IMG/VR virus record: IMGVR_UViG_3300020178_000002
Location: 186,001-250,000 of that record
Strand: one strand, 5' to 3'
DNA length: 64,000 nucleotides
The stretch's first letter is position 1. Every line of letters starts with the position of its first letter. The position numbers and the translations under genes are program-made. Of this stretch, positions 7,301 to 60,927 are shown piece by piece. A model generated the notes under the pieces. The model was not told the DNA's origin, did no database searches, and saw only the letters and a program-made list of their open reading frames with translations.

Positions 7301-7519
7301 TTAAAGACCCATCTCTACTTCCATGATCATACATTCTATTCTTCTGATCTCTTCATCTATCAAGCCTAATTTAAGGGTTTCCATGATATGCTGTTTGTTT
7401 GGTCTCTTATTCGAACCAATCATCTCATAGTATTCCTTATACAGGTTAAAAAGTTTAACTGCTTTAGATTGGGCATTGATGTATCTTGAACATACTTTCT
7501 TAGCTAGTTTATTTACCAT
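7301..7519 (-). CDS. hypothetical protein with KLAKKVCSRY leader
   Basis: Track ORF 7301..7552; the ATG at 7519 follows an AAGGAA RBS and is the likelier start. Confidence 0.6.
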   Translation of the reverse strand: MVNKLAKKVCSRYINAQSKAVKLFNLYKEYYEMIGSNKRPNKQHIMETLKLGLIDEEIRRIECMIMEVEMGL

Positions 7520-7520
7520 T

Positions 7521-7937
7521 TTAAAATTCCTTATCAAAAATAGGTCGGACATTAGGTCTGGGGTATTTTAGTTTGATCTCTGCCTTCACAGGAAGGTAGT
7601 CTCCTACAGAGAGTTTATCGAAAAGAAGGTATGCCCTGTTATATTCTTCGTAAAACCATTTTTGGATTTTCTTTTTCCCTCTGACTTCACTTACAACAAC
7701 AGACACAAGTGTTTCATCATCATGTATAAAATAAACGAATCCCCCAGCCTCTCCTCTTTTGACACCATTTATAAGAGGCTCTATTAAACCCACTGTTTTG
7801 AAATCAAGCATAAGACCATCCCAATTTTTAGATTGGGGTTTTTTTGCCAAAGCTCTCGCCTTGTCTTTAGCCCTACTATTTGATTGTCTCTCAAGACTAG
7901 CAACTCTAATTTCGAGATTCTTTAATATTTCTCTCAT
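7521..7937 (-). CDS. hypothetical protein with LEIRVASLERQS leader
   Basis: 138 aa; start coupled to the upstream gene's stop. Confidence 0.7.
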   Translation of the reverse strand: MREILKNLEIRVASLERQSNSRAKDKARALAKKPQSKNWDGLMLDFKTVGLIEPLINGVKRGEAGGFVYFIHDDETLVSVVVSEVRGKKKIQKWFYEEYNRAYLLFDKLSVGDYLPVKAEIKLKYPRPNVRPIFDKEF

Positions 7938-8278
7938 AATGTACCATCAAAGTCTTCATCTGGCTCTGGTTGACCTAAAGGTTTGGTTGGACTTTTAGGT
8001 GCAGGTGGTTTACCTCCACTGTTTTGCTCAAGAGCTGTTGTTGCTACATGAGTGTATTTGTCTAATGCTGCTTGACCTAATATATAGCCAATCTGTATGA
8101 AGCCACTTGTGACTATCATGGTAACTAGAACCATAAAGGCATAATGGTCAATTTGGGTTTTATATTCCCAGACAACATAAAACATGAGGATCTTCCAACC
8201 GATGTCTGCAATCAGATAGGCTAGGAACTTCTTGCTTTTAAGGGGGAGCTTCATTACATCTTCAACTTCTTTATTCAT
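7934..8278 (-). CDS. two-TM membrane protein (holin-like topology)
   Basis: Two hydrophobic helices and a Pro-rich charged tail. Confidence 0.6.
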   Translation of the reverse strand: MNKEVEDVMKLPLKSKKFLAYLIADIGWKILMFYVVWEYKTQIDHYAFMVLVTMIVTSGFIQIGYILGQAALDKYTHVATTALEQNSGGKPPAPKSPTKPLGQPEPDEDFDGTL

Positions 8279-8628
8279 AATCTCACCTTCAACTTAGATT
8301 TAGGGTTGCTTTGGTTTGCTTGCTGGTTAATTAAGTTTCGATTAGGGTTTCGAATTGCCAGCTTGTTCATAGATTTTTGGAAGTCATCTTCAACAGCTTG
8401 GTCATACTTTTGAGGTGCTCTGCTGAATGCATATATTTCATTCAGCCTTTCCTGCTCAAGTTCAGTCATTGAGGGCAAGAGAGCTAAGAAATCATCTCTT
8501 GCTTTCTGGTTACCATCAGAAAGAAATTCCATGATGAGGTATGCAGGCAATATAGGAGGGTTATCAGGGTCTCCCTCTATACCCTTAAGGGTATTAACCC
8601 CTGTTTTTCTTATCCAATAATTCATCAC
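8275..8628 (-). CDS. hypothetical protein (117 aa)
   Basis: ORF coupled to its neighbours. Confidence 0.65.
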   Translation of the reverse strand: MMNYWIRKTGVNTLKGIEGDPDNPPILPAYLIMEFLSDGNQKARDDFLALLPSMTELEQERLNEIYAFSRAPQKYDQAVEDDFQKSMNKLAIRNPNRNLINQQANQSNPKSKLKVRL

Positions 8629-9088
8629 CAGACTCTTTTTCTTTCTTAGATTTTGGAATCCACTCTGCTACTACACCTTTAAGTTCCACATCTTCCTCTG
8701 TCTTTGTCTTAATAACCCCACCATAGTTGACAAAGACAGAGAGCTTCTCAATAACAGCAGTCTGGAGTTCAAAGATTTGTTCCCGAAGCATTTGCATTTG
8801 GATCTGGGCATCTCTTAACCTTCCAATAAGTGCTTCTCTATCTGCATTTGCTTTTGCCAGCTTATCCTTCAAATCTTCAACTTCAGAAGGATCACGACCA
8901 GATGCAATAGCCATCATTGATGAAATAGAGCCTGTGATAACACCCAAGATACCAACAAGGACATCTCTATTTTGATCAACAATCTGCACATAGCTTAGGA
9001 AAACTATAAGCATAACTACTATAACTAAAAAGAATACAGAGAACCACCATCCTCTTTTGACTTTCAAATCTTCTTTATTGTCATTCAT
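8594..9088 (-). CDS. two-TM protein with coiled-coil tail
   Basis: WWFSVFFLVIVVMLIVFL and VLVGILGVITGSISSMMAIA helices, then a heptad-rich segment. Confidence 0.7.
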   Translation of the reverse strand: MNDNKEDLKVKRGWWFSVFFLVIVVMLIVFLSYVQIVDQNRDVLVGILGVITGSISSMMAIASGRDPSEVEDLKDKLAKANADREALIGRLRDAQIQMQMLREQIFELQTAVIEKLSVFVNYGGVIKTKTEEDVELKGVVAEWIPKSKKEKESGDELLDKKNRG

Positions 9089-9103
9089 GCCTAAACTCTT
9101 TTC

Positions 9104-9958: not shown

Positions 9959-9962
9959 CAGT

Positions 9963-10166: not shown

Positions 10167-10176
10167 CCTAAGCTCC

Positions 10177-10497: not shown

Positions 10498-10498
10498 A

Positions 10499-10852: not shown

Positions 10853-10879
10853 TAGACCTCCTTTTTAGAAGTCTAATGA

Positions 10880-24849: not shown

Positions 24850-26046
24850 TTATTTCTCTAACTTACTTTTTACCAACGAAGCGAACATTGACAAGGACAT
24901 TGATTGATTTTCTTTAACATTTCCCTCTTTTGGTGTCTCTACGGGCAAATCTTTTTTCACAAATACGCTCTCTTGCCTTTGTGGTATTTGACCCCCATAC
25001 ATACTCCATTTCAAGAAATCCACTTTAAACATTGCACCCGTTGGTCTTAAAGGGGCAGTCGCTAATGCGTCAGCTAACACTAATAAATTAGTCTGATGCA
25101 TATCCCATGCTTTCTCTAAAATGTCTTTTTTCCAAAAAGGTGGTGGGTTGCCAGCATTTAAGCCAATAGTAATTGCCCATGATGTTGCAGTAAGCAATCT
25201 GTCATACAAAACACCCACAGGAGAACTGCCCAAGAGATCATCAATAATGCCTAAAGCATTAGGAGTGTCTTCAATAAGAAGCTGGGAGATTTGGTCATTC
25301 CTATCAACATGAAGATATGCCCTTACTCCATCAAGACCTACATTACCATCATTTGAACTAGCTACACCCTCAATTGCTTTTAGGGCATCTCTAATATGCC
25401 CCTCTGTGAAGTCTGCAATTAATAAAAGAGCCTCTCTTTCATATGTAAAGCTTTCTTCCTCACAAACCTTAGCAAGTCGGTCTGCAATCTCATCGGACTT
25501 AACATGTTTGATTATAAAAGCAGGGGCACACCTTGAGAGAACAGTCTGTCTCATTTTCTCTGGTTCAGTAGTAGCAAAGATACAAACAAGCTTTTTGTTA
25601 AAGCTACCTTTGTCATTCTCTTCCATCGGTTTCAAAAGAGCATCTAGGGCATCTTTTGAAAGCTGATGAGCTTCGTCAAAAAGATATAGCTTCTTAGATC
25701 CTGAAAATGATGTATATGCGAGATCTTCCAATAGCTTTTTCACATCTGCTTTACCACTATTTGTGGCAGCATCTACTTCAATAAAGCTATCATGTGAGCC
25801 ATCTAACATAGATTTACATGAAACACATTCATCACAAGGTTCACCATCCACAGTAGAAGAACATAACAATGCTCTTGCCATAATCCTACCTAAGGTTGTT
25901 TTACCAGAACCATAAGGTCCTGCAAAAAGGTAAGACTGTCTCCACCCTGCATCTGACTTAATAAACCCTTTAAGGGTCTTAATTGTTTCTTTCTGACCTA
26001 GAACATCACTGTACTTGTAAGGTCTGTACTTTGTATCTAAAGACAT
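24850..26046 (-). CDS. dnaX: DNA polymerase III gamma/tau clamp-loader subunit
   Basis: KYRP...DVLGQ, GPYGSGKTT, Zn module CDECVSC, EVDAA, DEAH.LS, LLK..EE, ATTEP, SRC. Confidence 0.92.
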   Translation of the reverse strand: MSLDTKYRPYKYSDVLGQKETIKTLKGFIKSDAGWRQSYLFAGPYGSGKTTLGRIMARALLCSSTVDGEPCDECVSCKSMLDGSHDSFIEVDAATNSGKADVKKLLEDLAYTSFSGSKKLYLFDEAHQLSKDALDALLKPMEENDKGSFNKKLVCIFATTEPEKMRQTVLSRCAPAFIIKHVKSDEIADRLAKVCEEESFTYEREALLLIADFTEGHIRDALKAIEGVASSNDGNVGLDGVRAYLHVDRNDQISQLLIEDTPNALGIIDDLLGSSPVGVLYDRLLTATSWAITIGLNAGNPPPFWKKDILEKAWDMHQTNLLVLADALATAPLRPTGAMFKVDFLKWSMYGGQIPQRQESVFVKKDLPVETPKEGNVKENQSMSLSMFASLVKSKLEK

Positions 26047-33254: not shown

Positions 33255-34242
33255 AAACCATTCTTAGGTATCTTGAAGCAACTCTGGAAGCAGTCTTTCC
33301 TTTTTCTTCTTTTTCCTTAGAGCCTTTGTTTATAACCTCAACATACTTTTTAGCTCTGTCTTTTACTTCATTCAGAGCTTTCTCCATCTCTTTTTCATAG
33401 GCTTCTTGATCAAAGACCCCATCCTTAATAAAAGAGGATAGGGCTTTTACTTCATCTTTTGATGGAACACTATAGATTCCTTTGTAAAGTTGATCGAGAA
33501 GATCTTGGCTGGTGACTTCCTTTGCAGATTTCTTTTTATACTGCTTGGCTTCAGCTTCATTTCTACTTTTAACATATTTCTCATGCTTATCTATTTTATT
33601 TAGATCTAAGAGATTCACTCCCGCTTCAAAAAGGAAAGGAATTGCATAAATACCACCTGCAATAGCCTTACCAGAAACAGACAAAGCTGCCCCAGCTAAT
33701 CCTGTCATTGCAGAAATGCCGTACCTGCCAACCTCTTTGCCGATTTCTTTAGAAGCTTCTGAAAGATGTTCCATAGCAGTAGTCTTACTTTTCATAAGGC
33801 TATCTGTCATCTTTTCTTCTTCACCTTCTTTAAGGTCTTTCTTAAAGACTTTCTTGAAGAATTGACCCATCTCTTTTTTGATCTTCTCTTGGCTTTTAGG
33901 GTCAGGGTTTGCAAAAAGGTTGAAGCCTTTTTCAAAAGCAGTTGAGGGATTGTCTATTTTAGCTGAAAGGCTTCTAGGGATTCTTTTAAGTACCTTGACC
34001 GCACCTCCAGCCATAGTGGAGTTCCAATCTTTGAGTGCCCTTGCAGCAGACTCGTCATAATTCTCCATAATCCTATCGGTGAAGAACTCTTTCTTATTAT
34101 AGTACTTTTCTTTTTTCTTCTTATAGCTCTCCAAGAACTTTTTAGCATCTTCATGCTGGGCACTATCAGGGTCAGAGGCATAAGACTCAACAGTATCTAA
34201 GTAGATTTTCTTCTTTTTATAATAGACTACCTTTTTAGCCAT
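33229..34242 (-). CDS. hypothetical protein with hydrophobic segment and KTASRVASRYLR tail
   Basis: 337 aa; Gly/Ala-rich apolar segment. Confidence 0.75.
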   Translation of the reverse strand: MAKKVVYYKKKKIYLDTVESYASDPDSAQHEDAKKFLESYKKKKEKYYNKKEFFTDRIMENYDESAARALKDWNSTMAGGAVKVLKRIPRSLSAKIDNPSTAFEKGFNLFANPDPKSQEKIKKEMGQFFKKVFKKDLKEGEEEKMTDSLMKSKTTAMEHLSEASKEIGKEVGRYGISAMTGLAGAALSVSGKAIAGGIYAIPFLFEAGVNLLDLNKIDKHEKYVKSRNEAEAKQYKKKSAKEVTSQDLLDQLYKGIYSVPSKDEVKALSSFIKDGVFDQEAYEKEMEKALNEVKDRAKKYVEVINKGSKEKEEKGKTASRVASRYLRMVFSGRYRLY

Positions 34243-34247
34243 CTTAT

Positions 34248-35831
34248 TTACCTTCTCTCAAGCTCAATAATTTGTTTTGTGTTGTAGATACTTGCAGGGT
34301 AGGGGCTTAGAGAGATGTTGAAGAAGAGATAATGAGAACCATACTCTGACTCCTTCTTTAAGTCACCTGCCTCAATAGTGTAAGTGCCCTCTGAAAGAGA
34401 CCTACTTTGCATGGAGTTGTATCTTTGGATGGCACTTTGAAAAAACTTTAAGATAGTCTCCATCTTCCTTTCTTGACTGCTAGTAAAAGGAGTGCTTGAT
34501 TCTACTTCAAATCTAAATTGAACAGGGGAATCTGGGAGTGTTTTAGGTGTTTCAGATACAACATGGTTTGCGAAAGAGCTTCTTGTCTGCGTTTCCATTT
34601 TTTTAATAAGTTGTAATGGGATGGTCTTTTTAATAGAGGCTTGTTTCTCGGGACTCCTTTTCTTATGCTTAATCTTCCTAGAGCTACCTTTAGCAACATC
34701 TCTTTCTCTGTTCTGGTGTACACCTTTTCCAGAGCTGCCTACTCCATCTTCAAACATACCAGAGGTGTTAGGGTCTCTGAACTTAGGCATCTTGTTAGAA
34801 GGTTTACGCTTCTTTTTCTTTTTTTTCCCTGCAAGCCTAGACATGTTGTCTAGGTCTCTGAGGGCGAGGTCTATCATACTAAACCTACCTGTAATCGCAT
34901 GACCATCAAGTAAGTTAGCAAGCATTATAGCTTTCTCTCTCCTTGAGATGCCCTCAGGTAAAGACTCAAGAGCTAATCTAGCTTCTTCATCACCTACTGT
35001 AGTTTGAGATTGAATGCAGGGTAATACAGAAGCCATTCTTGAAGTTTGCTTAGGTAGGTGTCTGATAATCTCTGGAAATCTTGAGATTTCTTTAATGGTT
35101 CTTACAACTCTCCTACCCTCAATAAGCCTTACAGAGGGGATAGGGCTTCTTTCAAATTCGAGAGTGTAGTCTTCAATGCCAGGCACAGAGATTTTGTAAG
35201 TAGGGTTTTCATCAGTAGTTGACCATTGGTTTTCTACAATCAAGAAACCGAGGTGTCTTATGTTAGAAACTATTTCTCTAACTGCTTGAGGGAATGTTGT
35301 CCCTAAGCTAGCCATGATTTGTCTGCCATCAGGAGTAACTTCTCTGTCTATCATAAGAGCAGGTCTTCTAACTAAAAAGTTAGGCCATTTCTCAAACCAC
35401 TTGTTGTAGAAGTCATCTTCCCCAACAACTCTTACAGTTTTATCTGGGTTAGGGATATTGGGGTCTGCAACATGTACTTCATAACTTCCCTTTTCACCTG
35501 TCACATCATAAATCAGAGATGCGTGACTCCAATCACGACCCTCAGGATTCCATGCAATGAGAACAGGTCTACCTGAATCTGTCCATTCTTTAACTTGAGT
35601 GAGGGTAGCTGGTGTGGTGAGGGTAGCTCTACAACCGAAGTATTGGCAGCAGGCAAGTACTTCTTCCCACCTTGATCCTCTTAGTGCTTGAGCACCAATG
35701 ATCTCATTAACAGTTTCCTCATCACACTTTACACCTAGTGCTTGTAAAGCCATGCATGTAGAGGTTGCAACACAAGTGAACTGTGTTCTTTGTCTAATTG
35801 GCTTAACATCAGCTTTTGCTTTTCTTCTCAT
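34248..35831 (-). CDS. C39-like (papain-fold) cysteine peptidase fused to additional modules
   Basis: Q..Q.TC (catalytic Cys), PV.I.W...WSHA.L (His), V.VADP (Asp), followed by about 350 aa of unrelated segments. Confidence 0.8.
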   Translation of the reverse strand: MRRKAKADVKPIRQRTQFTCVATSTCMALQALGVKCDEETVNEIIGAQALRGSRWEEVLACCQYFGCRATLTTPATLTQVKEWTDSGRPVLIAWNPEGRDWSHASLIYDVTGEKGSYEVHVADPNIPNPDKTVRVVGEDDFYNKWFEKWPNFLVRRPALMIDREVTPDGRQIMASLGTTFPQAVREIVSNIRHLGFLIVENQWSTTDENPTYKISVPGIEDYTLEFERSPIPSVRLIEGRRVVRTIKEISRFPEIIRHLPKQTSRMASVLPCIQSQTTVGDEEARLALESLPEGISRREKAIMLANLLDGHAITGRFSMIDLALRDLDNMSRLAGKKKKKKRKPSNKMPKFRDPNTSGMFEDGVGSSGKGVHQNRERDVAKGSSRKIKHKKRSPEKQASIKKTIPLQLIKKMETQTRSSFANHVVSETPKTLPDSPVQFRFEVESSTPFTSSQERKMETILKFFQSAIQRYNSMQSRSLSEGTYTIEAGDLKKESEYGSHYLFFNISLSPYPASIYNTKQIIELERR

Positions 35832-35858
35832 AGGTCTACTCCTTTTTTTCCAGCTAAC

Positions 35859-35874
35859 TATAAAAGGAGTATAA
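35859..35874 (-). promoter_or_regulatory. putative late promoter motif (TTATACTCCTTTTATA)
   Basis: Variant match upstream of the C39 gene. Confidence 0.45.
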
Positions 35875-35882
35875 ATAGAAAG

Positions 35883-37139
35883 CTATCTCAGATACCTGGA
35901 CACAACTCTTTGTATAGAAGACTTTCTTCTTCTAAAGAGCCTATCCAATAAGCTACCCTCTTCTTTTTTCAACTCTTCGATTTTTGTTTTAGCAAATTCT
36001 TTAATTTCATCCACCTTAGCTGTAAGGCTTGGGTTTCTAGATTCTGAATTTTTTGACATACTATCAAGATCTATTAAGAGGTCTTTGACCTGCCTTATAG
36101 ACCTTGAACTTTTAATCTCATCTTCTCTTTTTAGAACATTGCTTGCGAACTCTACAGTTTGCTTAAAGGCTTCGACCTCTAAGAAGAAAGCTGATTCTTT
36201 TCTGATATCCTTCCCAAGTACTTTCTTCATTTCAACAATCCAAGAGTTAACAATTCTTAGAGACTCTTTTAGTTTTGAGTTAGAGATCATAGAGGGGTCT
36301 TTTTTTACTCGAAGTATAATCTTAGCAACTTTTCCTTTAATCTCAGTAACTCTGTTTCCTTTTTGCTTTTTTGCAATCTCCCTCATCTCATCAGTCATGC
36401 CCTTAACATCTCTCATTTGAAAGATTCTGTAGGGGTCTATTCCTTTAAGACCATTTACATTTCGACCTGATAAAGAAAAGGATCTAGGGAAATATGTATT
36501 TTTAAACTCAAAGCCATTAAGATTATAGTTTTTAATGTGGGCACAGAATGTACCTCCCTCAAAATAAAAACTGCCCTCTGATTGAATTCTAAGCTGGTCA
36601 CAATTAACATCACCCATTTTTGTATCTTTAAAAGTACAGTTCTTGAAGATGAGTGTGAAGCTTGAGCCTAATGTCCCGAACCTACAGCTTTTAAAGTGAC
36701 AGTTCACAAACTCAAAAGAACCACCTCTCTCCTTTAACCTCTCAGCTCTCTGGAAAGAATTTTCAAGACCCAAAGAGTGTGAAAAATAGGTATCTTCAAA
36801 TATTTCTCCACTAACTTCACCACTGTCTCTCTTTCTTTCTTTTCTCTCACTCGCATTGTCGAAATCATAGAAAATTGCTTCAAAGACAGTTGAGTTTTTT
36901 ACTTGGTCAACCCATTCCTGAGAAGACTCTTCTTCTTTGTTGTAGAAATCTTCATTGAGGTCTTCAAAATGGGTAGAAGCATCATCATAGCTGTCGAATT
37001 CAAATTTCTCTACTTCTCTAGACAGCTCTACCTTACTCCCCTTTATAATTTGATAGGTTATGACAGGTACATAATACACTATAGATTTATCATGTGAGGG
37101 ATTGCTGAAATTGAAATGCTTATGTGAATTTTTTCTCAT
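35883..37139 (-). CDS. pentapeptide-repeat-like protein with IQRVVSRYLR tail
   Basis: FVNCHFKSCRF...FKNCTFKDTKM beta-helix-like pentads; 418 aa. Confidence 0.65.
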   Translation of the reverse strand: MRKNSHKHFNFSNPSHDKSIVYYVPVITYQIIKGSKVELSREVEKFEFDSYDDASTHFEDLNEDFYNKEEESSQEWVDQVKNSTVFEAIFYDFDNASERKERKRDSGEVSGEIFEDTYFSHSLGLENSFQRAERLKERGGSFEFVNCHFKSCRFGTLGSSFTLIFKNCTFKDTKMGDVNCDQLRIQSEGSFYFEGGTFCAHIKNYNLNGFEFKNTYFPRSFSLSGRNVNGLKGIDPYRIFQMRDVKGMTDEMREIAKKQKGNRVTEIKGKVAKIILRVKKDPSMISNSKLKESLRIVNSWIVEMKKVLGKDIRKESAFFLEVEAFKQTVEFASNVLKREDEIKSSRSIRQVKDLLIDLDSMSKNSESRNPSLTAKVDEIKEFAKTKIEELKKEEGSLLDRLFRRRKSSIQRVVSRYLR

Positions 37140-37169
37140 AGTCCGATACTCCTTTTTTTTTGAGGGTTT

Positions 37170-37185
37170 TATAAATAAGGTATTA
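37170..37185 (-). promoter_or_regulatory. putative late promoter motif (TAATACCTTATTTATA)
   Basis: Match upstream of the 35883..37139 gene. Confidence 0.55.
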
Positions 37186-37214
37186 GCTTTTTATAGACTA
37201 TATATAAAATCACC

Positions 37215-37235
37215 TATATGGTCATTGACCATATA
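37215..37235. promoter_or_regulatory. perfect 10-1-10 inverted repeat (operator-like) overlapping a TATAAT box
   Basis: TATATGGTCA-T-TGACCATATA, with TATAAT at 37232-37237. Confidence 0.55.
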
Positions 37236-37258
37236 ATCCCCACAAAGAAAGGAATTGT

Positions 37259-38074
37259 ATGTTAGATACATTCGGATACCACCACACTTTATTAAAAGCT
37301 CGAGAGTTCTTCCTATCAAAAGGACTTATCGAAGTACCTGTTCAATCAAGACTTTCTATTCTCGCTGCTTGCGAAGATCCAAAAACAGTCAGAACTTTTG
37401 AATATGATAACATTATTTGGCCTCTTCCCCAGACTGGTCAAATGTGGCTTGAGCATGAATTGTTAAAAAACCCGACACAAGTTGGGTTTTTTTGTGTCTC
37501 CACATCATACAGAAATGAGCCAAACCCTATACCAGGTCGTCATGAAAAGATCTTCCCAATGCTTGAGTTTGAAATGAAGGGTAATCAGGAAGACCTTATT
37601 CAGTTTGAAATCGACTTTGTTGAGTTTTTACTTGGTGAGAAGTCTATTGAAGTAGACTATGAGGACATGAGTGCAAAGTATGGTGTTTCTATTTTAGAGA
37701 ATGAGCATGAGGAGCAAATCTGCAAAGACCATTCTGCTTCTACTATCCTAAAAGATTTCCCTAGAAGAACCAGCCCTTTCTGGAATATGAGAAGACATGA
37801 TGGGACAAAAGAACACTACAAGAAAGTAGATGTTCTTATTGATGGTATTGAAACCATAGGTTCAGCAGAGAGAGCAGTAAGTGTTGAAGAAATGAAAGAG
37901 GACTTCTACACAATTTCTGATGGTGAATATGCAGAGCTTCTATTTGAGAAGTTTGGCAAAGAGCGTGTAGAAGCAGAACTTAATGAGTATCTATCAAACG
38001 ATTTCTTTGAGCGTTTTGGTGGTGGTATTGGCATGACCAGATTAGCTCAAGCATATAACAGAAGATTCCTCTAA
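37259..38074 (+). CDS. class II aminoacyl-tRNA synthetase catalytic-core-only protein (Asn/Asp/Lys type; AsnA- or EpmA-like)
   Basis: Motif 1 (FF...G.IEV), motif 2 (SYRNE...GRH..IF.MLEFE), ETIGSAER, motif 3 (GGGIG.TRL); no OB-fold anticodon domain; 271 aa. Confidence 0.85.
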   Translation: MLDTFGYHHTLLKAREFFLSKGLIEVPVQSRLSILAACEDPKTVRTFEYDNIIWPLPQTGQMWLEHELLKNPTQVGFFCVSTSYRNEPNPIPGRHEKIFPMLEFEMKGNQEDLIQFEIDFVEFLLGEKSIEVDYEDMSAKYGVSILENEHEEQICKDHSASTILKDFPRRTSPFWNMRRHDGTKEHYKKVDVLIDGIETIGSAERAVSVEEMKEDFYTISDGEYAELLFEKFGKERVEAELNEYLSNDFFERFGGGIGMTRLAQAYNRRFL

Positions 38075-53769: not shown

Positions 53770-54677
53770 TGGTTTTACATGGGAACTCAAAGAGTTATAT
53801 CCAGATTAGATCTCAAGAGATTCTTGAAGAATACAGAGCGAATGGTTATGAAGTCAGAGATCTTTCCCCAAAGAGTGAACTCTCTCTGGAAGAGTGTTTC
53901 AGCTCTGGTTTGTTTGACACAAGCCCTATTTTAGTTTTTGTTAAGAACCCTATGAAAGTTAAAGGTCTTAGTGCTTACTTGAAAGATACAAGGGGTTGTG
54001 AGGTTCTTGTATGTTATGACAAGGATAAATTGCCGAAGATGTTAACAGGCTATATGTCTCAATGTTTTACAGAGCCTAAATACGACAATCAGAAATTAGA
54101 TTGGTGTGCTAAGTTTGTATCAGACTATGTAGAAAGGCACGGGAAGAAGATTTCGAAAGATCTTTCAAAGGCTGTTGTTTCAAAAGTAGGTACAGATCTT
54201 GGTGTCCTTCGATTTGAGGTCTTGAAATATGTCATGTCAAGCGAGGGGGAAGATATTACTCCACGAACCATTGCAGGGAACTTGGGGGATTTGACAGGGC
54301 CAGAGTCTTCTGATTTGATTGACTCTATCATAAGCAGAGACTCGAGAAGATTTCTTAAGGTATGTGCCAAGATAGAAAAGAGTAGTTCAACAGATCAAAC
54401 GATGGCTGTTTGTAATGGTCTTTTGTTCTACACTTTAAGACAGTTATTTGACGTAGGTGTTTTGCTTGCAGAAAAATATACACCCGATCAGATTGCAAAT
54501 GATTTAGGAAAGAACCCTTGGTTGGTACAAAATATATTAAAGCCTCAAGTTGAGTCATTGGGTCTTGAAAGAATTATTCTTTTAATAGAGTCTCTATATA
54601 ACTCAGAGAATTCTGTTCTGAAAGGTTCACGAAACCCTTGGAGCAAATTCAAGTCAGAAATCTTAAGAAACATTTAA
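53760..54677 (+). CDS. clamp-loader delta-like subunit (HolA-like)
   Basis: VG.DLG.L..E..K lid motif, PWLV...., E..LKG; 305 aa. Confidence 0.7.
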   Translation: MSVMVLHGNSKSYIQIRSQEILEEYRANGYEVRDLSPKSELSLEECFSSGLFDTSPILVFVKNPMKVKGLSAYLKDTRGCEVLVCYDKDKLPKMLTGYMSQCFTEPKYDNQKLDWCAKFVSDYVERHGKKISKDLSKAVVSKVGTDLGVLRFEVLKYVMSSEGEDITPRTIAGNLGDLTGPESSDLIDSIISRDSRRFLKVCAKIEKSSSTDQTMAVCNGLLFYTLRQLFDVGVLLAEKYTPDQIANDLGKNPWLVQNILKPQVESLGLERIILLIESLYNSENSVLKGSRNPWSKFKSEILRNI

Positions 54678-54715
54678 ATGAAGCCCACAAGGTTATAGTG
54701 GGCGAAGGATATGAA

Positions 54716-57391
54716 ATGAAGGTTCAATTCTCAGACCACGCAAATTCTTTGTTGAAATCTTATTACATGAAAGATAGTGATGCTTCTGTTGAAGATGCTT
54801 TTAAAAGAGCCTCTTTTGCATACACACCGAACAAGGAGTTGGCTCAAAGAATATATGAGTATGCTTGTAAGGGCTGGTTTATGTTTAGCTCTCCAATTCT
54901 ATCTAATGCTGAAAGTTCAGGTATGCCTATTTCTTGCTTTCTCTCGTATGTAGAAGACACAGTAGAAGGGTTGATTGAACACACGGAAGAATTAAGATGG
55001 ATGTCTGTGATGGGTGGTGGAGTAGGAGGCCATTGGGATCATGTTCGTTCAGTGAGCAAGAAATCTCCTGGTCCTATTCCTTTCTTAAAGACTGTTGATT
55101 CAGATATGGTTGCATACAGACAAGGATTAACTCGAAAGGGTTCTTATGCAGCATATATGGATGTGAGTCACCCAGACATTATTGAGTTCTTGAACTTGAG
55201 ATTGCCAACAGGTGGAGACCCAGCTAGGAAATGTTTTAATCTTAACAATGCAGTAAATCTGACTGATGAGTTCATGAGTGCAGTTATGGCTGGTGATAAG
55301 TGGGATCTTGTAGACCCTAAGGACAAGACTGTTCGTAATACAGTAGATGCTCGTGAGCTTTGGCAAAGAATCCTTGAGGTTCGCTTTAGGACAGGAGAAC
55401 CTTATCTTAACTTCATTGACGAGGCGAACCGACACCTACCTCAACCTCTCAAAGATAAGGGCTTGAAGATTCATGGTTCAAACCTTTGTGTTCGAGGTGA
55501 CACACAAGTACTTACTCGTGATGGTTATTTCCAGATCTCATCTTTGGATAATCAAGATGTTGAGGTTTGGAACGGAAAAGAATGGTCTATGACCACCGTT
55601 GTCCAAACAGGAGAAGATCAAGAGATCCTTGAGGTTGTTCTTGACAATGGGACTACTCTTTACACAACACCTTATCACAAGTTTTATGACCATAAGGGTC
55701 ATGTGGCAGAGGCCAAAGATTTAACCACTTCCACAAAGCTCTTGAAGTTTGAGATGCCTGTGGTTGAGGGTAGGGGCGATTGGGAGAACGCTTATTCTTG
55801 TGGGTTCTTCACAGGAGACGGGACATACAACCACCTCCATCAACCAATATCTTATCTTTACGGTAAGAAGAAGGCATTACTTGACAGGGTCGCCACACCT
55901 CTTTGTCGAGTCCACACAGGTTCTAAATCGGATCGGTTTTCAGTTCTCCATGACAAGTCCGAAATCAAAGCAAAGTACGAAGTGCCTCTTGGTATGTCCT
56001 TAAGCACTCGCTTAAAGTGGCTCTCGGGACTCTTAGATGCAGATGGTTGCGTGGCTAGGAATGGGCTAAATCAAAGCTTACAGCTTGCGTCTACAAATCG
56101 AGACTTTCTCACCGATCTGTGTCTCATGTTAAATACACTTGGAGTTCAGCCCAGAGTGTCAGACTTCATGCCTGAGAGAACGGTAAACTTTGGCTCGGAG
56201 AGGGGTGGTGAGTATCGTTGTAAGGAAGCATGGAGGATCTTAATCAACTCTAACGATACTCAAAAGCTACTTGGATTGGGCTTGGAAACTCATCGTCTAG
56301 TCTTGAAGGAGCACAAGCCACAAAGGTCAGCTTCAAGGTTTGTTCGTGTCCTTAGTGTCTCTAAGTCACAGGATGCAGACACTTATTGTTTCAACGAACC
56401 GAAGAGACACATGGGGGTGTTTAATGGTGTTCTTACAGGCAACTGTAATGAAATTCATCTCCCAACAGGTAAAGGTAGGTCTGCTGTTTGTTGCCTTTCA
56501 AGCCTTAATGTGGAGATGTTTGATGAGTGGAAAGACACAACTATTGTTGAAGACTTGATTGAGTTTCTTGATGATGTTTTACAGTACTTCATTGAGAATG
56601 CTCCCCCTCAGTTAGGGAAAGCTATCTACAGTGCCAAGAGAGAAAGGTCTTTGGGTCTGGGTACTATGGGTTTCCATGCTTACCTCCAAAAGAAGGGTCT
56701 TCCCTTTGAGTCTGTCTTTGCTGTTTCAGCTAATCGTAAGATTTACTCAACCATTAAGGAAAGGGCAGTTGCTTCTTCAAAGCGTCTAGCAGAAATCAAA
56801 GGTGAGTATCTTGATGGTATTGGATCTGGCATGAGAAATAGCCACCTGCTTGCTATTGCTCCAAATGCTAACTCAGCTATTATTCTTGATACAAGCCCAA
56901 GCATTGAACCTTGGAAGTCAAATGCTTTCACACATAGAACCAGAGCAGGTTCTTTTCTTCAGTTTAATAAGCATCTAATGGCTGTGCTTGAAAAGCATAG
57001 TCCAGAAGAAGATAAGCAAGAGTGGATTGACTCACAGGTTCAGTCTATTATTTTAGCTCAAGGTTCTGTGCAACATTTAGAGTATTTAAGTGACTTTGAG
57101 AAAAATACTTTTAAGACAGCATTTGAGATTGACCAGATGTGGATAGTGGAACACGCTTCTGTAAGACAGGAGTGGGTCTGTCAGGGTCAATCTGTAAACT
57201 TGTTCTTCCCTGCTGGTTCAGACAAGAACTATGTGAACGCTGTTCACCTTTCAGCATGGAAGAAGAAGCTCAAGGGTCTGTATTATCTCCGAACCAATGC
57301 AGGTGTAGTTGCTGACAAGGTTAGTGAGAAGATTGAGCGTAAGGCATTGAAGGATTATGACATTGATGAATGTATGAGCTGTCAGGGTTAG
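54716..57391 (+). CDS. nrdA: ribonucleotide reductase class Ia alpha subunit (intein-containing, no ATP cone)
   Basis: SSPIL, ISCF, GGGVG, R.G..A.Y...HPD, SNL|C NEI, LA.APNA, CQGQS.NL, LYYLR, C-terminal ECMSCQG. Confidence 0.95.
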   Translation: MKVQFSDHANSLLKSYYMKDSDASVEDAFKRASFAYTPNKELAQRIYEYACKGWFMFSSPILSNAESSGMPISCFLSYVEDTVEGLIEHTEELRWMSVMGGGVGGHWDHVRSVSKKSPGPIPFLKTVDSDMVAYRQGLTRKGSYAAYMDVSHPDIIEFLNLRLPTGGDPARKCFNLNNAVNLTDEFMSAVMAGDKWDLVDPKDKTVRNTVDARELWQRILEVRFRTGEPYLNFIDEANRHLPQPLKDKGLKIHGSNLCVRGDTQVLTRDGYFQISSLDNQDVEVWNGKEWSMTTVVQTGEDQEILEVVLDNGTTLYTTPYHKFYDHKGHVAEAKDLTTSTKLLKFEMPVVEGRGDWENAYSCGFFTGDGTYNHLHQPISYLYGKKKALLDRVATPLCRVHTGSKSDRFSVLHDKSEIKAKYEVPLGMSLSTRLKWLSGLLDADGCVARNGLNQSLQLASTNRDFLTDLCLMLNTLGVQPRVSDFMPERTVNFGSERGGEYRCKEAWRILINSNDTQKLLGLGLETHRLVLKEHKPQRSASRFVRVLSVSKSQDADTYCFNEPKRHMGVFNGVLTGNCNEIHLPTGKGRSAVCCLSSLNVEMFDEWKDTTIVEDLIEFLDDVLQYFIENAPPQLGKAIYSAKRERSLGLGTMGFHAYLQKKGLPFESVFAVSANRKIYSTIKERAVASSKRLAEIKGEYLDGIGSGMRNSHLLAIAPNANSAIILDTSPSIEPWKSNAFTHRTRAGSFLQFNKHLMAVLEKHSPEEDKQEWIDSQVQSIILAQGSVQHLEYLSDFEKNTFKTAFEIDQMWIVEHASVRQEWVCQGQSVNLFFPAGSDKNYVNAVHLSAWKKKLKGLYYLRTNAGVVADKVSEKIERKALKDYDIDECMSCQG
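55487..56443 (+). mobile_element. intein with LAGLIDADG homing endonuclease (319 aa)
   Basis: Begins C-V-R-G-D-T; block B TTPYHKF; CGFFTGDG and LSGLLDADG; ends GVLTGN before the +1 Cys. Confidence 0.93.
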
Positions 57392-57452
57392 TATTTTATT
57401 AGTTTCTTTATCTAAAATTCTATAACACATAGAAAAGATAAAGGACTGAAAA

Positions 57453-57863
57453 ATGATAGAAGTAGAATACCAACATGACCAATATGCTAGCATTCCTCAA
57501 CCACCTAGCAAGTCTAAAAAGATGAGTAAGGCTCAACTTATTAAGTTGATCAATGAATACTCAAATAGAGCAGATGAGCTAGCAGAACAGCTTGAATCAA
57601 AAGACCCTCTTTATGAGAGGAGAGATTCAGCTAACTACTCAAACTTCAAAGTAGCTAAAGTACTACATAAGATGAACTTTGAGGATAAACCTAATGCAGC
57701 ATACCCCCCAAGAATCTGGGTAGACATCTATGTTTATTCACTAGAAAATGGTGGTGAAACCTTTTTCCGAAGTTCGATAATCATAAATGCAAAGGATTTC
57801 TTGTTCCACACAGGAGCAAGAACCTTAAGCAACAAGATCAGAGCACTTAAGGGCTTACTTTAG
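57453..57863 (+). CDS. hypothetical protein (136 aa)
   Basis: AAGGA RBS. Confidence 0.65.
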   Translation: MIEVEYQHDQYASIPQPPSKSKKMSKAQLIKLINEYSNRADELAEQLESKDPLYERRDSANYSNFKVAKVLHKMNFEDKPNAAYPPRIWVDIYVYSLENGGETFFRSSIIINAKDFLFHTGARTLSNKIRALKGLL

Positions 57864-59527
57864 AACCTGCCACCCTCTTCAGCAGGCTTGCTGTATTTGA
57901 GAGATAGATTCTTAGCTATTGTTTCAATAACTTCAGTGTTCTCAGCAAGCATACGACCAGCTTCACCATAGATACCTCTAAGTACCTCGTTAAACTGAGA
58001 ATCGTTAAGAGTCCACATGTCTCTTTCCAACTTAGCTTTGGTAGAGATGGGGTCTACATTAAGAAGCTCTAAGATAACATCAATGTCCAAAGAACCTTTT
58101 TGGTAAAGGTTGAACAGAGCATCAAATGTATCTTGGTTGTCTCGAAGCCCAAGGCGAGTAAAGCTAAGGGTTGGGTGTAGAACTATCTCTTCCCCATCTT
58201 CATCTTCTTCGATGAAGCCCATACGCTTACACATAGGCTTTAGGATATTTTCCTCTACCATTTCTTGGAGGACTTCTCTCATAAGCATATAACGTGTATT
58301 GATGACTTCAAGATTGATTCTATCTCCAGAATAGCTTGACTCTCCAGATAGAAGAGACTCTGTGACACCAAGACCAGCATACATTTGTCGGTCTGTCATA
58401 TCATACTCACCAGAGAGTTCAAGCAGACGAGAATCAGCACCCATCTCTTCCCAAGAAACTTGGAAGTTGGCAATGATTGAGTAGTCTGGGTCTTGGAGAG
58501 CAATGTCTACTTGTTCTCTCAATGCTTCAACATCAGCAGCATCCATATCCTCTGCATAGACAAGTCGAATAGGTGTCATGTGTCTTGAAGCGATAGAGGT
58601 TTGTGCCTGTCTGAGTTTGTCTCTGTAAACCAAGATCCTTAAACAACGCTCAAGCATTGAGTGTCCTCTGGGTTCATATTGAGATTTCTTACGAGCCATG
58701 TAGTAAACAAAAGACCCTTGATCTGGATCTGTGTTTAGTCTGATGTTTCTACCTTCTCTAATTGCTTCTACAACATCTTCAGGCATTGACTCTACAACCC
58801 TTAATGCAGAGGGGTCTTGTAAAGTTGCTCTTTCTACAATGTCTTTAGTCTTACTGTCAGGTATAAGCTCTATAATTTTTTCACTTGTGAAAGGAAAGCT
58901 TTCCATATGAACTTGCTCTGGAGGTAGGACTCTTAGACCTGTCCAGCCTTTGTAGTTCTTCTTGAGCCATCTGTAAGCTCTAACATTTGAATCCGAGTAT
59001 TCTTCCCACTCTGTTGCAGCACTGCCATCTTCCCTAAGTACATTTCGTTCTTTATGTGTAACAGACTTAGGCATATCAGGGTTATTATCTTCACAGAACA
59101 CAAAAACTTCACCTAAGAGATTGTATTCATGGAGGATTTCTATGAGTCTGTGCAAGAGACCTGTTCTTTTAGCCCACTTCTCACAGAATCTGAGTGCTTC
59201 ATTGGCCATTTCATGGTTTCTAGCTTTTGGTAATCCAAGTCTGATTTTACTAAGAGGCAATTCAGTGTGCAGGTCAACAGCTTGACCAACAAAGGGGTCT
59301 GTTCTATAGAAGAATCTAAAATAGTTTCTTTGCTCATCTTGGCTTTGGGGTAGTTCTAAAAAGTCGGTAGACAATTCAGGACTGTAGAAGTTTCCCCCAG
59401 AGCCCATCATAGTTCCATTTGTAGTCATAGCAACTTTGACTCTGGACTTCATATCTTTGAGATCAAACTTTCTAGTGGTTGCTTTTGATCTTGATTGAAC
59501 TTTCCCAATAATATCTTCCTCACTCAT
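57860..59527 (-). CDS. probable phage portal protein
   Basis: 555 aa helical protein with DPFV..AVDLH.ELP, L.P..V, ..RG.S.L..C and PIRL segments reminiscent of large-phage portals. Confidence 0.55.
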   Translation of the reverse strand: MSEEDIIGKVQSRSKATTRKFDLKDMKSRVKVAMTTNGTMMGSGGNFYSPELSTDFLELPQSQDEQRNYFRFFYRTDPFVGQAVDLHTELPLSKIRLGLPKARNHEMANEALRFCEKWAKRTGLLHRLIEILHEYNLLGEVFVFCEDNNPDMPKSVTHKERNVLREDGSAATEWEEYSDSNVRAYRWLKKNYKGWTGLRVLPPEQVHMESFPFTSEKIIELIPDSKTKDIVERATLQDPSALRVVESMPEDVVEAIREGRNIRLNTDPDQGSFVYYMARKKSQYEPRGHSMLERCLRILVYRDKLRQAQTSIASRHMTPIRLVYAEDMDAADVEALREQVDIALQDPDYSIIANFQVSWEEMGADSRLLELSGEYDMTDRQMYAGLGVTESLLSGESSYSGDRINLEVINTRYMLMREVLQEMVEENILKPMCKRMGFIEEDEDGEEIVLHPTLSFTRLGLRDNQDTFDALFNLYQKGSLDIDVILELLNVDPISTKAKLERDMWTLNDSQFNEVLRGIYGEAGRMLAENTEVIETIAKNLSLKYSKPAEEGGRF

Positions 59528-59769
59528 TTGCTCTTCCTTTTCTTAATTGCTTTCAGATAGCTCTTAATTATTTTTTTAAGTAAAACAATATGATCTGGGT
59601 TTCCTTCAAAAAAGGCAGCCCAAGACCCACCTTTTTTTTGATATACCAGAGATACCTTCTCCAGAACATCTTGTGAAGGCTTAGAAAAGCCATAGATAGT
59701 GAAGATCTTTTTTATAATCCTAAGATCTGCTCTTTCTTGCTCTCTGAATTCATATCTTTTTTTAGTCAT
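59524..59769 (-). CDS. hypothetical protein (81 aa)
   Basis: GGAGGAG RBS; coupled to the portal-like gene. Confidence 0.65.
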   Translation of the reverse strand: MTKKRYEFREQERADLRIIKKIFTIYGFSKPSQDVLEKVSLVYQKKGGSWAAFFEGNPDHIVLLKKIIKSYLKAIKKRKSK

Positions 59770-59808
59770 ATCTCCTCCTTTATTATACTAGAGGAGATAA
59801 AAACTATA

Positions 59809-60321
59809 TCAAGACTCTACAACTTTTAAGTACAATTTTTTCCACTGACCCATTTTTGGTTCGGGGTGAGAGGAAAGCATATTAAAAGCTTCCCAGAGCT
59901 TAAGGGAATCTTCTAAAGGTATATCTTTCATTTTATAACTGATGGTCATTTCAGTTCTTTTCTTCAATATATCAATGTCAGAAACTGCATCTTGGCTTGT
60001 TTCTTCAAAGATGTCTTCTTTCTTTTTATATACCCAAGGAGTCAAGTTGTACTTGGACTCTAATAGATAACAGGCTTTATTAAACTCAACTCCCTCTATC
60101 TCCATAACAGTAGATATAGAGTCTCTCGTTTTACCACAGGCAAAGCAATACCATGAGTTAGACTCTGGGTATGCTCTGGCACTAGGTGCGTTGTCTGAAC
60201 CATCACCATGCAAGTCACAACGGAACTGTTGTTCTTTCTCAACGTTGATAACATCATAACCATATCCACTAAGCACAGACATGATTGATATTTTTTCTTT
60301 TATACGCTCAGATCTTTTCAA
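59809..60321 (-). CDS. stand-alone CHC2 zinc finger (DnaG primase Zn-binding domain)
   Basis: FRCDLH...PS......WYCFACG...D.I......EG..F..A. Confidence 0.8.
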   Translation of the reverse strand: MKRSERIKEKISIMSVLSGYGYDVINVEKEQQFRCDLHGDGSDNAPSARAYPESNSWYCFACGKTRDSISTVMEIEGVEFNKACYLLESKYNLTPWVYKKKEDIFEETSQDAVSDIDILKKRTEMTISYKMKDIPLEDSLKLWEAFNMLSSHPEPKMGQWKKLYLKVVES

Positions 60322-60454
60322 TACTGAATGCCTTTCTTAGGTTTCTGGAAAAAAGGATAGCTTCCAAGTAAGATTGGAAGGTAAGGCTCTTGTTTTCAAA
60401 TTTAACTATGTACATCTTAAAAATCACTTTCAGCTATGGTGGGCTTAAAGATCT

Positions 60455-60470
60455 TTATAGAAAGTTTATA
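60455..60470 (+). promoter_or_regulatory. putative late promoter motif (TTATAGAAAGTTTATA)
   Basis: Plus-strand match upstream of the 60517 operon. Confidence 0.55.
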
Positions 60471-60516
60471 AGAAGTTCTACTTCAAATATGATTATTTTT
60501 AAGGTGGTTATAAGTT

Positions 60517-60927
60517 ATGAGTAAGAATGTTCCTGTAGACAAAAAGCTCTGGTCTGAAATTCAATCCCTAGCAAAAGGTGAGAGAAAGACACCTGTTTCT
60601 AGGGGCAAAGAAACTGTGAACCCTGTCAACAATGGTTCAGGGTTTAAAGTATTCCCATCTGCTTATGCCAATGGCTGGGCTTTGGCTCAGTACAAAAGAC
60701 TAGGTGGCAAGTGGAAGAAAGAAAGCTCAGAGTTCAAAGAGCCTCGCAAGTGGGACAAAGAACACTGTGAATCTAAGACCTGTGATGAGATGGGCTTTTC
60801 AGAAAAGGCATCTTGTAGACCTTATAAGAACTGCTACAAGAAATCGAGTACTGAAGAATCTCTATTGTATAATGTTGTAAACAGATACATGGAGAAAATA
60901 TATGACAGTCGAAGAGATCGTTTTTAA
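60517..60927 (+). CDS. DUF5872-like phage protein
   Basis: LW......AK...FKVFPSAYANGW....YKRLGGKWK, recognised from memory. Confidence 0.6.
   Translation: MSKNVPVDKKLWSEIQSLAKGERKTPVSRGKETVNPVNNGSGFKVFPSAYANGWALAQYKRLGGKWKKESSEFKEPRKWDKEHCESKTCDEMGFSEKASCRPYKNCYKKSSTEESLLYNVVNRYMEKIYDSRRDRF

What the first reader, a model, noticed from the sequence alone, without database searches (positions are those of the whole stretch)
7301..60927. RV(A/V)SRYL terminal tag on unrelated proteins
KTASRVASRYLR ends the 33229 protein and KSSIQRVVSRYLR ends the 35883 protein. Variants occur at the N-terminus (KLAKKVCSRYI, 7301; IQRVASLHM, 5462) and near the C-terminus (YNVVNRYM, 60517). The motif often follows a [KR]xA/S site, like a removable capsid-targeting sequence analogous to the T4 CTS (inference).
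Basis: partly seen in the sequence, partly recalled or inferred. Interest (0 to 1): 0.6.

Follow-up and report, generated by a model that had tools for sequence, protein, structure and literature searches.

The report
Shared address tag on jumbo-phage proteins
A short, almost invariant peptide (core R-V-A-S-R-Y-L) sits at the very start or very end of many unrelated, fast-evolving proteins in this 312-kb phage and its uncultivated relatives; it behaves like a portable address label, most plausibly for loading cargo into the phage head, though its receptor is unknown.

Summary
In this 312,136-bp DTR phage genome, RV[AV]S[RL][YH][LMI] occurs 5 times against 0.004-0.007 expected. All five lie within 13 residues of a protein end: three in the window and two outside it. 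Codons differ between copies, so selection acts on the peptide. A profile of the tag finds 21 hits at E<=0.01 in 18 related IMG/VR jumbo-phage records (0.18 expected), up to 7-8 matches per genome. Hits sit 1-8 residues after the start Met, 0-11 before the stop, or in a linker. The bearers are mostly lineage-specific ORFans: pentapeptide-repeat-like, GNAT-like, DUF5872/HExxH mosaic and hydrophobic proteins. One conserved bearer is encoded in the head module, upstream of the scaffold-like gene and a 292-aa HK97-fold capsid protein that is 95-99% identical across the clade. My best reading is a portable cargo-address peptide, most likely for packaging into the procapsid, analogous in logic to the T4 CTS or encapsulin loading peptides but not a member of either. 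This is inference: the receptor is unidentified, a capsid-tag co-fold gave no answer, and no virion proteome exists for this uncultivated clade.

The parts
33265..33285 (-). Canonical tag core (R-V-A-S-R-Y-L) 11 residues before the stop of the 337-aa ORFan at 33229-34242. The protein is Lys/Glu-rich with a central Gly/Ala-rich hydrophobic segment.
   Evidence: 19.0 bits. The tag is identical in the 93%-identical twin, while 4 of the 10 residues after it differ.
35889..35909 (-). Tag core (R-V-V-S-R-Y-L) one residue before the stop of the 418-aa protein at 35883-37139, which is pentapeptide-repeat-like (a lead only).
   Evidence: 15.7 bits. No orthologue in 18 relatives apart from an 89% twin. 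Atlas lead.
5909..5929 (-). N-terminal tag (R-V-A-S-L-H-M) starting 5 residues after the probable ATG start of the ~160-aa Cys-rich protein at 5462-5953.
   Evidence: 22.3 bits. Orthologues in G001 and G016 keep an N-terminal tag, while G002 and G003 replace it by a long acidic extension.
7478..7498 (-). Degenerate N-terminal variant (K-V-C-S-R-Y-I) in the small protein at 7301-7552. The likely true start is the ATG at 7519, which puts the variant 7 residues after Met.
   Evidence: Low score alone (3.3 bits), but the sub-variant is shared with the N-terminus of genome 113558-114064(-), whose orthologues bear the canonical tag.
60871..60891 (+). Degenerate variant (N-V-V-N-R-Y-M) 11 residues before the stop of the DUF5872-like protein at 60517-60927.
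   Evidence: Orthologous mosaic proteins of G001, G002 and G003 carry tag-like variants (RVAERY, RVAHRYL) at this position, right after the conserved Cys-rich domain, and G014 carries one at its C-terminus.
7890..7910 (-). Partial N-terminal match (I-R-V-A-S-L-E) at residues 10-16 of the 138-aa ORFan at 7521-7937. Its status is uncertain.
   Evidence: No orthologues found.
34248..35831 (-). Core papain/C39-like cysteine peptidase gene lying between the two C-tagged genes. It is a candidate processing enzyme.
   Evidence: Pfam PF13529, 22.7 bits, just under the cut-off. The N-terminal ~175 aa are conserved in all compared relatives. In G002 the protein ends in a tag variant and G003 has a looser one.
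57860..59527 (-). Portal protein. It was used to find the related clade and is a possible but untested receptor.
   Evidence: PHROG portal family, 1.1e-33. 79 related IMG/VR loci at 52-91% identity.

Best explanation
The motif is a portable short linear address peptide of about 9-13 residues: small Ala/Ser-rich residues, then R-V-A-[S/N]-[R/L/A/K]-[Y/H]-[L/M/I], then a charged residue and Ala/Lys. It probably forms a two-turn amphipathic helix with Val, Ala, Tyr and Leu on one face. It is attached by a flexible join to the start, the end or an inter-domain linker of many unrelated accessory proteins. It docks them to one highly conserved partner of this phage clade. The most likely destination is the assembling procapsid, meaning the scaffold core or the inner face of the HK97-fold shell. 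Tagged proteins would then be packaged and delivered with the DNA. The tag may be trimmed afterwards by a phage protease; the candidates are the ClpP-like protease and the core C39-like cysteine peptidase. What is shown: the motif, its non-random terminal position, peptide-level selection, clade-wide conservation on non-homologous cargo, and its presence in a disordered linker of a head-module protein. What is inferred: docking to a common partner, the capsid as destination, ejection and removal.
For: Five copies occur against ~0.005 expected, all terminal, and codon choice differs between copies. In 18 relatives there are 21 hits at E<=0.01 against 0.18 expected, and 16 of 18 records have a match at E<=1. 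The core is unchanged even where the portal is only 64-69% identical. Among hits of 10 bits or more in six whole genomes, 10 are N-terminal, 5 are C-terminal and 3 are internal. Cargo is accessory: three of the five G000 bearers have no orthologue in five whole relatives. Leads on cargo type are pentapeptide-repeat-like, GNAT-like and DUF5872/HExxH mosaic proteins with tags at module junctions. This is the same logic as the T4 internal proteins, described as diverse defence proteins sharing only a CTS (PMC3012670), and as virion-delivered polyvalent proteins (PMC5512222). The head link is as follows. A core protein with an SH3/Tudor-like domain, a linker and a Zn ribbon (P0009, genome 173915-176743) carries the motif in a low-pLDDT linker. 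Its gene lies next to the scaffold-like gene in every relative where both were located, upstream of the capsid protein gene in G000. The three relatives whose copy lacks the motif (G005, G015, G012) have almost no tags elsewhere. The capsid protein is 95-99% identical across the clade, so it is as conserved as the tag. In G003 the orthologue of the 5462 protein carries a 43-aa segment 67% identical to that phage's scaffold-like protein.
Against: There is no direct evidence of packaging, cleavage or binding. The co-fold of the capsid protein with the tagged tail scored 0.01, which counts as no answer. Tagged genes are scattered, and several lie among replication and nucleotide-metabolism genes rather than in structural modules. 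The upstream regions of the 35883 gene and of the DNA polymerase and UvsX genes look alike by eye, which hints at non-late expression. G005 keeps a near-identical capsid protein yet has almost no tags. No conserved cleavage motif flanks the tag.
Confidence: 0.4

Rival explanations
1. The tag docks to a conserved hub that is not part of the virion. The hub could be a host or phage protein such as a chaperone, an AAA+ unfoldase (with the tag acting as a degron or adaptor signal), RNA polymerase or a replisome component. In this reading the tag recruits or time-limits accessory proteins inside the infected cell.
For: The tag is terminal, exposed and position-independent, as with many hub-binding motifs. 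Several tagged genes sit beside replication genes; the 92406 gene lies directly upstream of the DNA polymerase gene. A ClpP-like protease is encoded. The core is invariant across phages with GC from 31% to 47%, so presumably across different hosts, which would suit a universally conserved host target.
Against: The DNA polymerase and the other conserved enzymes examined carry no tag. The motif does not fit the clamp-binding or PIP consensus: Gln is not conserved and aromatic pairs are absent. Degrons of the SsrA or MuA type need the free C-terminus, whereas these tags lie 0-11 residues from it and some sit in linkers. One bearer is a head-module gene.
Confidence: 0.28
2. The motif is primarily a protease recognition or processing site that marks module boundaries. 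The protease would be the core C39-like cysteine peptidase or the ClpP-like protease. Fused and split versions of the same modules would then yield the same mature products. Any targeting would be secondary.
For: Tags sit at junctions of mosaic multi-domain proteins and at the ends of the corresponding stand-alone modules. The C39-like peptidase is a core gene flanked by the two C-tagged genes here. It lies next to tagged-cargo families in G001, G002 and G003, and in G002 it ends in a tag variant itself. Small Ala/Ser residues precede the core.
Against: Removing 5-15 terminal residues serves no evident purpose unless the piece had a prior role. No invariant scissile dipeptide was found. G005 keeps the peptidase but has almost no tags. 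The peptidase assignment is below Pfam's cut-off.
Confidence: 0.17
3. The motif is a membrane-targeting amphipathic helix like those at the ends of MinD, FtsA or MreB.
For: It is terminal, short, basic and amphipathic. Two bearers have hydrophobic segments.
Against: Membrane-targeting helices conserve amphipathicity, not sequence, whereas here R, V, A and S are nearly invariant across the clade. The hydrophobic face is weak (Val, Ala, Tyr, Leu). Proteins that already have transmembrane segments would not need such a helix.
Confidence: 0.05
4. There is no function: the matches reflect chance, a translated DNA element, or a remnant of common ancestry among paralogues.
For: Some weak matches are indeed chance. 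The Topo-IB-like protein and the scaffold-like protein have RVAS strings that are not conserved in orthologues. The tail of the 33229 protein resembles a truncated copy of the P0009 linker region.
Against: There is a roughly thousandfold excess over expectation, strict terminal placement, synonymous codon variation, no similarity between bearers outside the tag, and conservation across 18 genomes.
Confidence: 0.02

Closest known systems
Phage T4 capsid targeting sequence (CTS) of internal proteins IPI-III, Alt, gp67 and gp68
   Same: A short conserved peptide is the only shared feature of otherwise diverse, fast-evolving proteins, several per genome, often encoded in variable islands. In T4 it directs them into the scaffolding core, and it is portable to foreign proteins (PMC3012670).
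   Different: The T4 CTS is strictly N-terminal. From my own knowledge, it ends in a gp21 cleavage site of the (L/I)-x-E type. Here the tag also works at the C-terminus and in linkers, and its sequence is unrelated. The phage has no S77 protease or gp23-type capsid protein, and cleavage is unproven.
Encapsulin cargo-loading (targeting) peptides
   Same: Short terminal peptides on unrelated cargo, usually C-terminal and sometimes N-terminal, bind the lumenal face of a small HK97-fold shell protein lacking a delta domain. The capsid protein here is 292 aa, and its model matches HK97 gp5 and encapsulins.
   Different: The consensus is different, with no Gly-Ser-Leu type motif. Cargo genes are mostly not adjacent to the shell gene. 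This is a DNA-packaging phage with portal, terminase and tail. Binding to the shell is untested, since one search gave no answer.
Virion-delivered polyvalent proteins of phages (Iyer et al. 2017, PMC5512222)
   Same: Mosaic multi-domain effector-like proteins with an embedded HExxH peptidase-like motif. Modules are shuffled between genomes, and the proteins are proposed to be packaged and processed.
   Different: That class is defined by domain architecture, often anchored by MuF or portal fusions, and not by a recurrent linear tag. No MuF-type anchor was identified here, though this was not tested exhaustively.
Encapsulation peptides of bacterial microcompartments
   Same: Amphipathic helices of about 18 residues at either terminus, joined by a flexible linker, that load diverse enzymes into a protein shell (my own knowledge).
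   Different: Those peptides conserve helix character rather than sequence and bind BMC-fold shell proteins. No such shell is indicated here.

Membership tests
T4-type capsid targeting sequence | Conserved leader at the extreme N-terminus only | tested here: not met
   Tags occur at N-termini, at C-termini and in linkers (10, 5 and 3).
T4-type capsid targeting sequence | T4-type head machinery: S77 prohead protease (gp21) and gp23-family capsid protein | tested here: not met
   PF03420 and PF07068 are absent from the complete genome. The capsid protein is a 292-aa HK97-type protein.
T4-type capsid targeting sequence | Diverse cargo sharing only the tag | tested here: met
   The bearers have no mutual similarity and mostly no orthologues.
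T4-type capsid targeting sequence | Cargo present in virions and tag removed by the prohead protease | not testable with these tools
   The clade is uncultivated. Members of the capsid protein cluster are all metagenomic.
Encapsulin cargo-loading peptide | HK97-fold shell protein without a delta domain | tested here: met
   AF2 model with pLDDT 93.9. The top PDB matches are HK97 gp5, with encapsulins from rank 28. A separate acidic scaffold-like gene lies upstream.
Encapsulin cargo-loading peptide | Peptide binds the lumenal face of the shell protein | tested here: inconclusive
   The co-fold scored 0.01, which the tool reports as no answer.
Encapsulin cargo-loading peptide | Family consensus motif and cargo gene next to the shell gene | tested here: not met
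   The consensus is different. Only P0009 is in the head module, and the other bearers are scattered.
PIP-box / sliding-clamp binding motif | Q-x-x-[LIVM]-x-x-[FY]-[FYLW] on replication enzymes | tested here: not met
   Gln is present in only some copies and there is no aromatic pair. The DNA polymerase and other replication proteins carry no tag.
Terminal degrons (SsrA / MuA type) | Motif at the free C-terminus, or a defined N-terminal motif | tested here: not met
   The distance to the stop varies from 0 to 11 residues, and linker copies exist.
Polyvalent virion-delivered proteins | Large mosaic proteins combining effector domains with a processing peptidase | tested here: inconclusive
   DUF5872 proteins of 517-997 aa in four relatives have shuffled modules, and an HExxH motif is seen in the G001 and G014 copies.

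The most novel reading that the evidence does not exclude
A whole clade of uncultivated jumbo phages uses one position-independent cargo-loading peptide to load a changing arsenal of effector-like proteins into a capsid built from a minimal, almost invariant HK97-fold protein. The peptide works at the N-terminus, at the C-terminus or in a linker. This would be a phage counterpart of the encapsulin loading system. The injected proteome of any member could then be read directly from its sequence.
Probability: 0.33. Interest if true: 0.8.

Novelty: new variant of a known kind. Interest (0 to 1): 0.64.

Why it matters
If the tag is a loading signal, it gives a sequence-only way to list the packaged and injected proteins of a widespread, uncultivated jumbo-phage clade. 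The 90%-identity capsid protein cluster alone has 190 members. The listed proteins are likely anti-defence or host-takeover factors and are otherwise anonymous ORFans. It would also show that cargo addressing by a short peptide is used by a bona fide tailed phage at either protein end. Such addressing is known from T4 (N-terminal) and from encapsulins. It would further provide a roughly 10-residue handle for loading foreign proteins into large capsids. Even if the destination is not the capsid, an almost invariant docking motif on hypervariable proteins points to a conserved, still unidentified hub that a peptide pull-down could find.

Tried and rejected
- **Family scans of tagged proteins.** Pfam and PHROG scans of the seven tagged or candidate window and genome proteins, and of ten tagged proteins from relatives, gave nothing above the cut-offs. 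PDB sequence searches of four bearers gave nothing.
- **Orthologue approach for the 35883 protein.** Only an 89% twin exists, plus one weak broken hit, so conservation in orthologues had to be tested on the tag itself.
- **Co-fold.** Complex prediction of the capsid protein (87-row alignment) with residues 298-337 of the 33229 protein scored 0.01 and 0.00, reported as no answer, and the controls were not run. I use it neither for nor against binding.
- **P0009 C-terminal model.** The model (pLDDT 66) does not dock the motif onto the SH3-like or Zn-ribbon domains. Foldseek gave only generic Tudor/KOW/PWWP-like similarity.
- **Phylogenetic profiling for a receptor.** I looked for genes present in tag-rich G001, G002, G014 and G003 but absent from tag-poor G005. 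This returned methylases, PhoH, an amidase and unknowns, with no convincing candidate.
- **Strings rejected as tags.** RVAS-like strings in the scaffold-like protein and in the Topo-IB-like protein are not conserved in orthologues. The portal's internal I-A-S-R-H-[LM] string is conserved in the two tag-poor genomes listed (G003, G005), so I treat it as structural.
- **Upstream-region inspection.** This gave only a weak hint of shared AT-rich promoter-like boxes.
- **Errors and omitted steps.** One family-scan slot was wasted on a gene split across two loci. I did not scan public collections with a degenerate DNA pattern, because thousands of chance hits were expected. I did not use the reads tools.
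Full report
**What the window is.** The window is bases 186001-250000 of a 312,136-bp single-contig IMG/VR virus record with direct terminal repeats, judged complete. The GC content is about 38%.

The record is a tailed jumbo phage. Its identified genes are:
- portal at window 57860-59527(-);
- baseplate wedge proteins at genome 30-35 kb;
- a 1603-aa sheath at genome 166187-170998;
- large terminase at 252721-255843, and a 292-aa HK97-type major capsid protein at 180564-181442;
- a ClpP-like protease at 97119-97850.

T4-type S77 protease, HK97-type S78 protease and gp23-type capsid families are absent. All relatives are metagenomic, and none is cultivated.

**Checking the observation.** There is one correction: the 33229 protein continues for ten residues after the tag.

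A pattern for the core, RV[AV]S[RL][YH][LMI], matches five times in the 336 ORFs of the genome. The expectation is 0.004 analytically and 0.007 in shuffles. All five matches lie within 13 residues of a protein end.
- Three are in the window: 33229 and 35883 (C-terminal) and 5462 (N-terminal).
- Two are outside it: genome 92406-93053 (C-terminal, directly upstream of the DNA polymerase gene) and genome 10234-11520 (N-terminal).

A 13-column profile separates these five (15.7-22.3 bits) from all other six-frame segments (10.8 bits or less). The DNA under the tags uses different Ser and Arg codons, so selection acts on the peptide and not on a nucleotide element. The bearers share nothing else and have no family assignment.

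**Conservation.** The 35883 protein has only an 89% twin in public data and no orthologue in 18 related genomes. In the twin locus the tag of the 33229 protein is unchanged, while four of the ten residues after it differ.

The portal protein recovers 79 related IMG/VR loci at 52-91% identity, many on contigs of 200-620 kb. Searching 18 of these records with the tag profile gave 21 hits at E<=0.01 per genome, against 0.18 expected. Sixteen of the 18 records have a match at E<=1, with up to 7-8 matches per genome.

I read the hits in their ORFs. The same core, usually R-V-A-S-R-Y-[LM], lies in one of three places:
- 1-8 residues after the start Met;
- 0-11 residues before the stop;
- in a linker.

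It is preceded by Ala/Ser/Thr/Pro-rich residues and followed by a charged residue and then Ala or Lys. Among hits of 10 bits or more in six whole genomes, ten are N-terminal, five are C-terminal and three are internal (I reassigned two entries by hand).

The core is unchanged in relatives whose portal is only 64-69% identical. G003 and G005, each about 300 kb, serve as internal negative controls with zero or one hit.

**The weak variants.**
- The protein at 60517 is a DUF5872-type protein. Its orthologues in G001, G002 and G003 are mosaic proteins of 517-997 aa that carry tag-like variants (RVAERY, RVAHRYL) immediately after the same conserved Cys-rich domain. G014 carries one at its C-terminus. 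The degenerate string in the window is therefore at the homologous position.
- The 7301 variant shares its particular sub-form with the N-terminus of genome 113558-114064. That protein belongs to a small family whose orthologues in G001 and G014 begin with the canonical tag. The language-model atlas places this family with GNAT acetyltransferases at 0.94-0.97.
- A partial match at the N-terminus of window 7521-7937 remains uncertain.
- RVAS-like strings in the Topo-IB-like protein ending at window 267 and in the scaffold-like protein are not conserved in orthologues, so I discard them.

**Who carries the tag.** The bearers are accessory proteins:
- Three of the five G000 bearers have no orthologue in five whole relatives.
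- The 35883 protein resembles pentapeptide-repeat proteins (atlas scores 0.83, a lead only).
- Several bearers are GNAT-like.
- The DUF5872 proteins are mosaics; the G001 and G014 copies carry an HExxH motif and the G002 copy an intein-like insertion.
- The 33229 and 10234 proteins have Gly/Ala-rich hydrophobic segments.
- Tagged genes tend to cluster in variable islands: genome 113-116 kb, 191-194 kb and 219-223 kb, and G014 19.9-22.3 kb.
- A core papain/C39-like peptidase (window 34248-35831, just under Pfam's cut-off) lies between the two C-tagged genes. It lies near tagged-cargo families in other genomes, and in G002 it ends in a tag variant itself.

**Link to the head.** One bearer is a core gene, P0009 (genome 173915-176743). 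It has a long charged coiled-coil region, an SH3/Tudor-like barrel, a linker and a four-Cys Zn ribbon.
- The C-terminal module is found in 17 of the 18 relatives; the exception is G017, which is only 36% complete. It occurs either fused or as a stand-alone protein of about 180-225 aa.
- In most relatives the linker contains the motif or a relative of it. In the AF2 model this stretch is a short helix of low confidence between two confident domains, as expected for an exposed docking motif.
- In every relative where both genes were located, this gene lies next to the acidic scaffold-like gene. In G000 the order is P0009, scaffold-like gene, a ~195-aa conserved protein, capsid protein gene.
- The three relatives whose copy lacks the motif (G005, G015, G012) have almost no tags elsewhere. 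This association is suggestive but weak, because G005 and G015 are close kin.
- The tail of the 33229 protein looks like a truncated copy of this linker region.
- The capsid protein is 95-99% identical across genomes whose GC ranges from 31% to 47%. It folds confidently as a minimal HK97 domain close to HK97 gp5 and to encapsulins.
- In G003 the orthologue of the 5462 protein carries a 43-aa segment that is 67% identical to that phage's scaffold-like protein.

**Interpretation.** These facts fit a portable address peptide that docks diverse cargo to one conserved partner. The closest functional precedent is the T4 CTS. A review describes the T-even internal proteins as a highly diverse set of defence proteins with only a conserved CTS that encapsidates them into the scaffolding core (PMC3012670). 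Encapsulin loading peptides and virion-delivered polyvalent proteins (PMC5512222) are the other analogues.

Membership in the T4 family fails on position, sequence and head machinery. Membership in the encapsulin family fails on consensus and gene adjacency.

The capsid as destination is inference. I put about 0.4 on capsid loading and about 0.28 on a non-virion hub. I put about 0.17 on a pure processing signal, and little on a membrane helix or on chance.

**Limits.**
- ORFs were called by a simple longest-ORF rule, so some N-terminal distances depend on the chosen start.
- Only six genomes were read whole.
- I joined stretches of these bacterial-virus records only in scratch files, for scanning.

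Noticed in passing
G000 genome 180564-181442 (outside the window) and its orthologues in G001, G002, G003, G005 and G014: The 292-aa HK97-fold capsid protein is 95-99% identical across phages whose portal is 79-88% identical and whose GC ranges from 31% to 47%. This is unusually strong constraint for a capsid protein.
   Followed up: partly
window 54638-57391 (+): The class I ribonucleotide reductase large subunit is split into two matching parts (residues 67-285 and 603-916). The insert in between gives a weak terminase/endonuclease-like hit, so it is probably an intein or homing element.
   Followed up: no
window 4731-5465 (-): A phage-encoded DUF481 outer-membrane beta-barrel-type protein (PF04338, 3.6e-10) lies immediately downstream of the N-tagged 5462 gene. 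The pair is conserved in G001 and G002.
   Followed up: no
G002 150944-153937 (L198): The DUF5872 domain of this 997-aa mosaic protein is interrupted by an insertion that looks like an intein. It splits the conserved aromatic-rich motif of the domain.
   Followed up: no
G000 genome 184900-186267 (ends at window 267) and 84505-85851: There are two paralogous eukaryotic-type topoisomerase IB-like genes (PF01028, 3.6e-17 and 4.1e-15) in one phage genome.
   Followed up: no
G000 genome 271249-278283 and 278340-285305 (-): Two adjacent ORFs of about 2,300 aa each are conserved only over short stretches in relatives. Their function is unknown.
   Followed up: no
G000 genome 299407-300792 (+) and 261298-262629 (+): The genome encodes a GroEL-like chaperonin (PHROG 7.5e-20) and a PIN-PhoH fusion protein.
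   Followed up: no
capsid protein cluster: One member of the capsid protein cluster sits on a 212,922-bp contig deposited as a 'Candidatus Peribacter sp.' MAG. This is probably a phage contig binned into a bacterial genome.
   Followed up: no
G014 25857-25952 and G001 265956-266051; G014 116456-116524 and G001 369796-369864: Tag-like strings occur in tiny stop-to-stop segments without a start codon and are conserved between the two genomes. These may be non-coding conserved elements or mis-framed genes. I excluded them from the counts.
   Followed up: no
window 37259-38074 (+): This is an RNA-ligase-like gene with 73-75% nucleotide identity over about 225 bases to the 'tRNA ligase' genes of Prochlorococcus T4-like cyanophages. 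It was the only DNA-level match in the phage collection for the 5-kb stretch searched (window 33000-38000).
   Followed up: no
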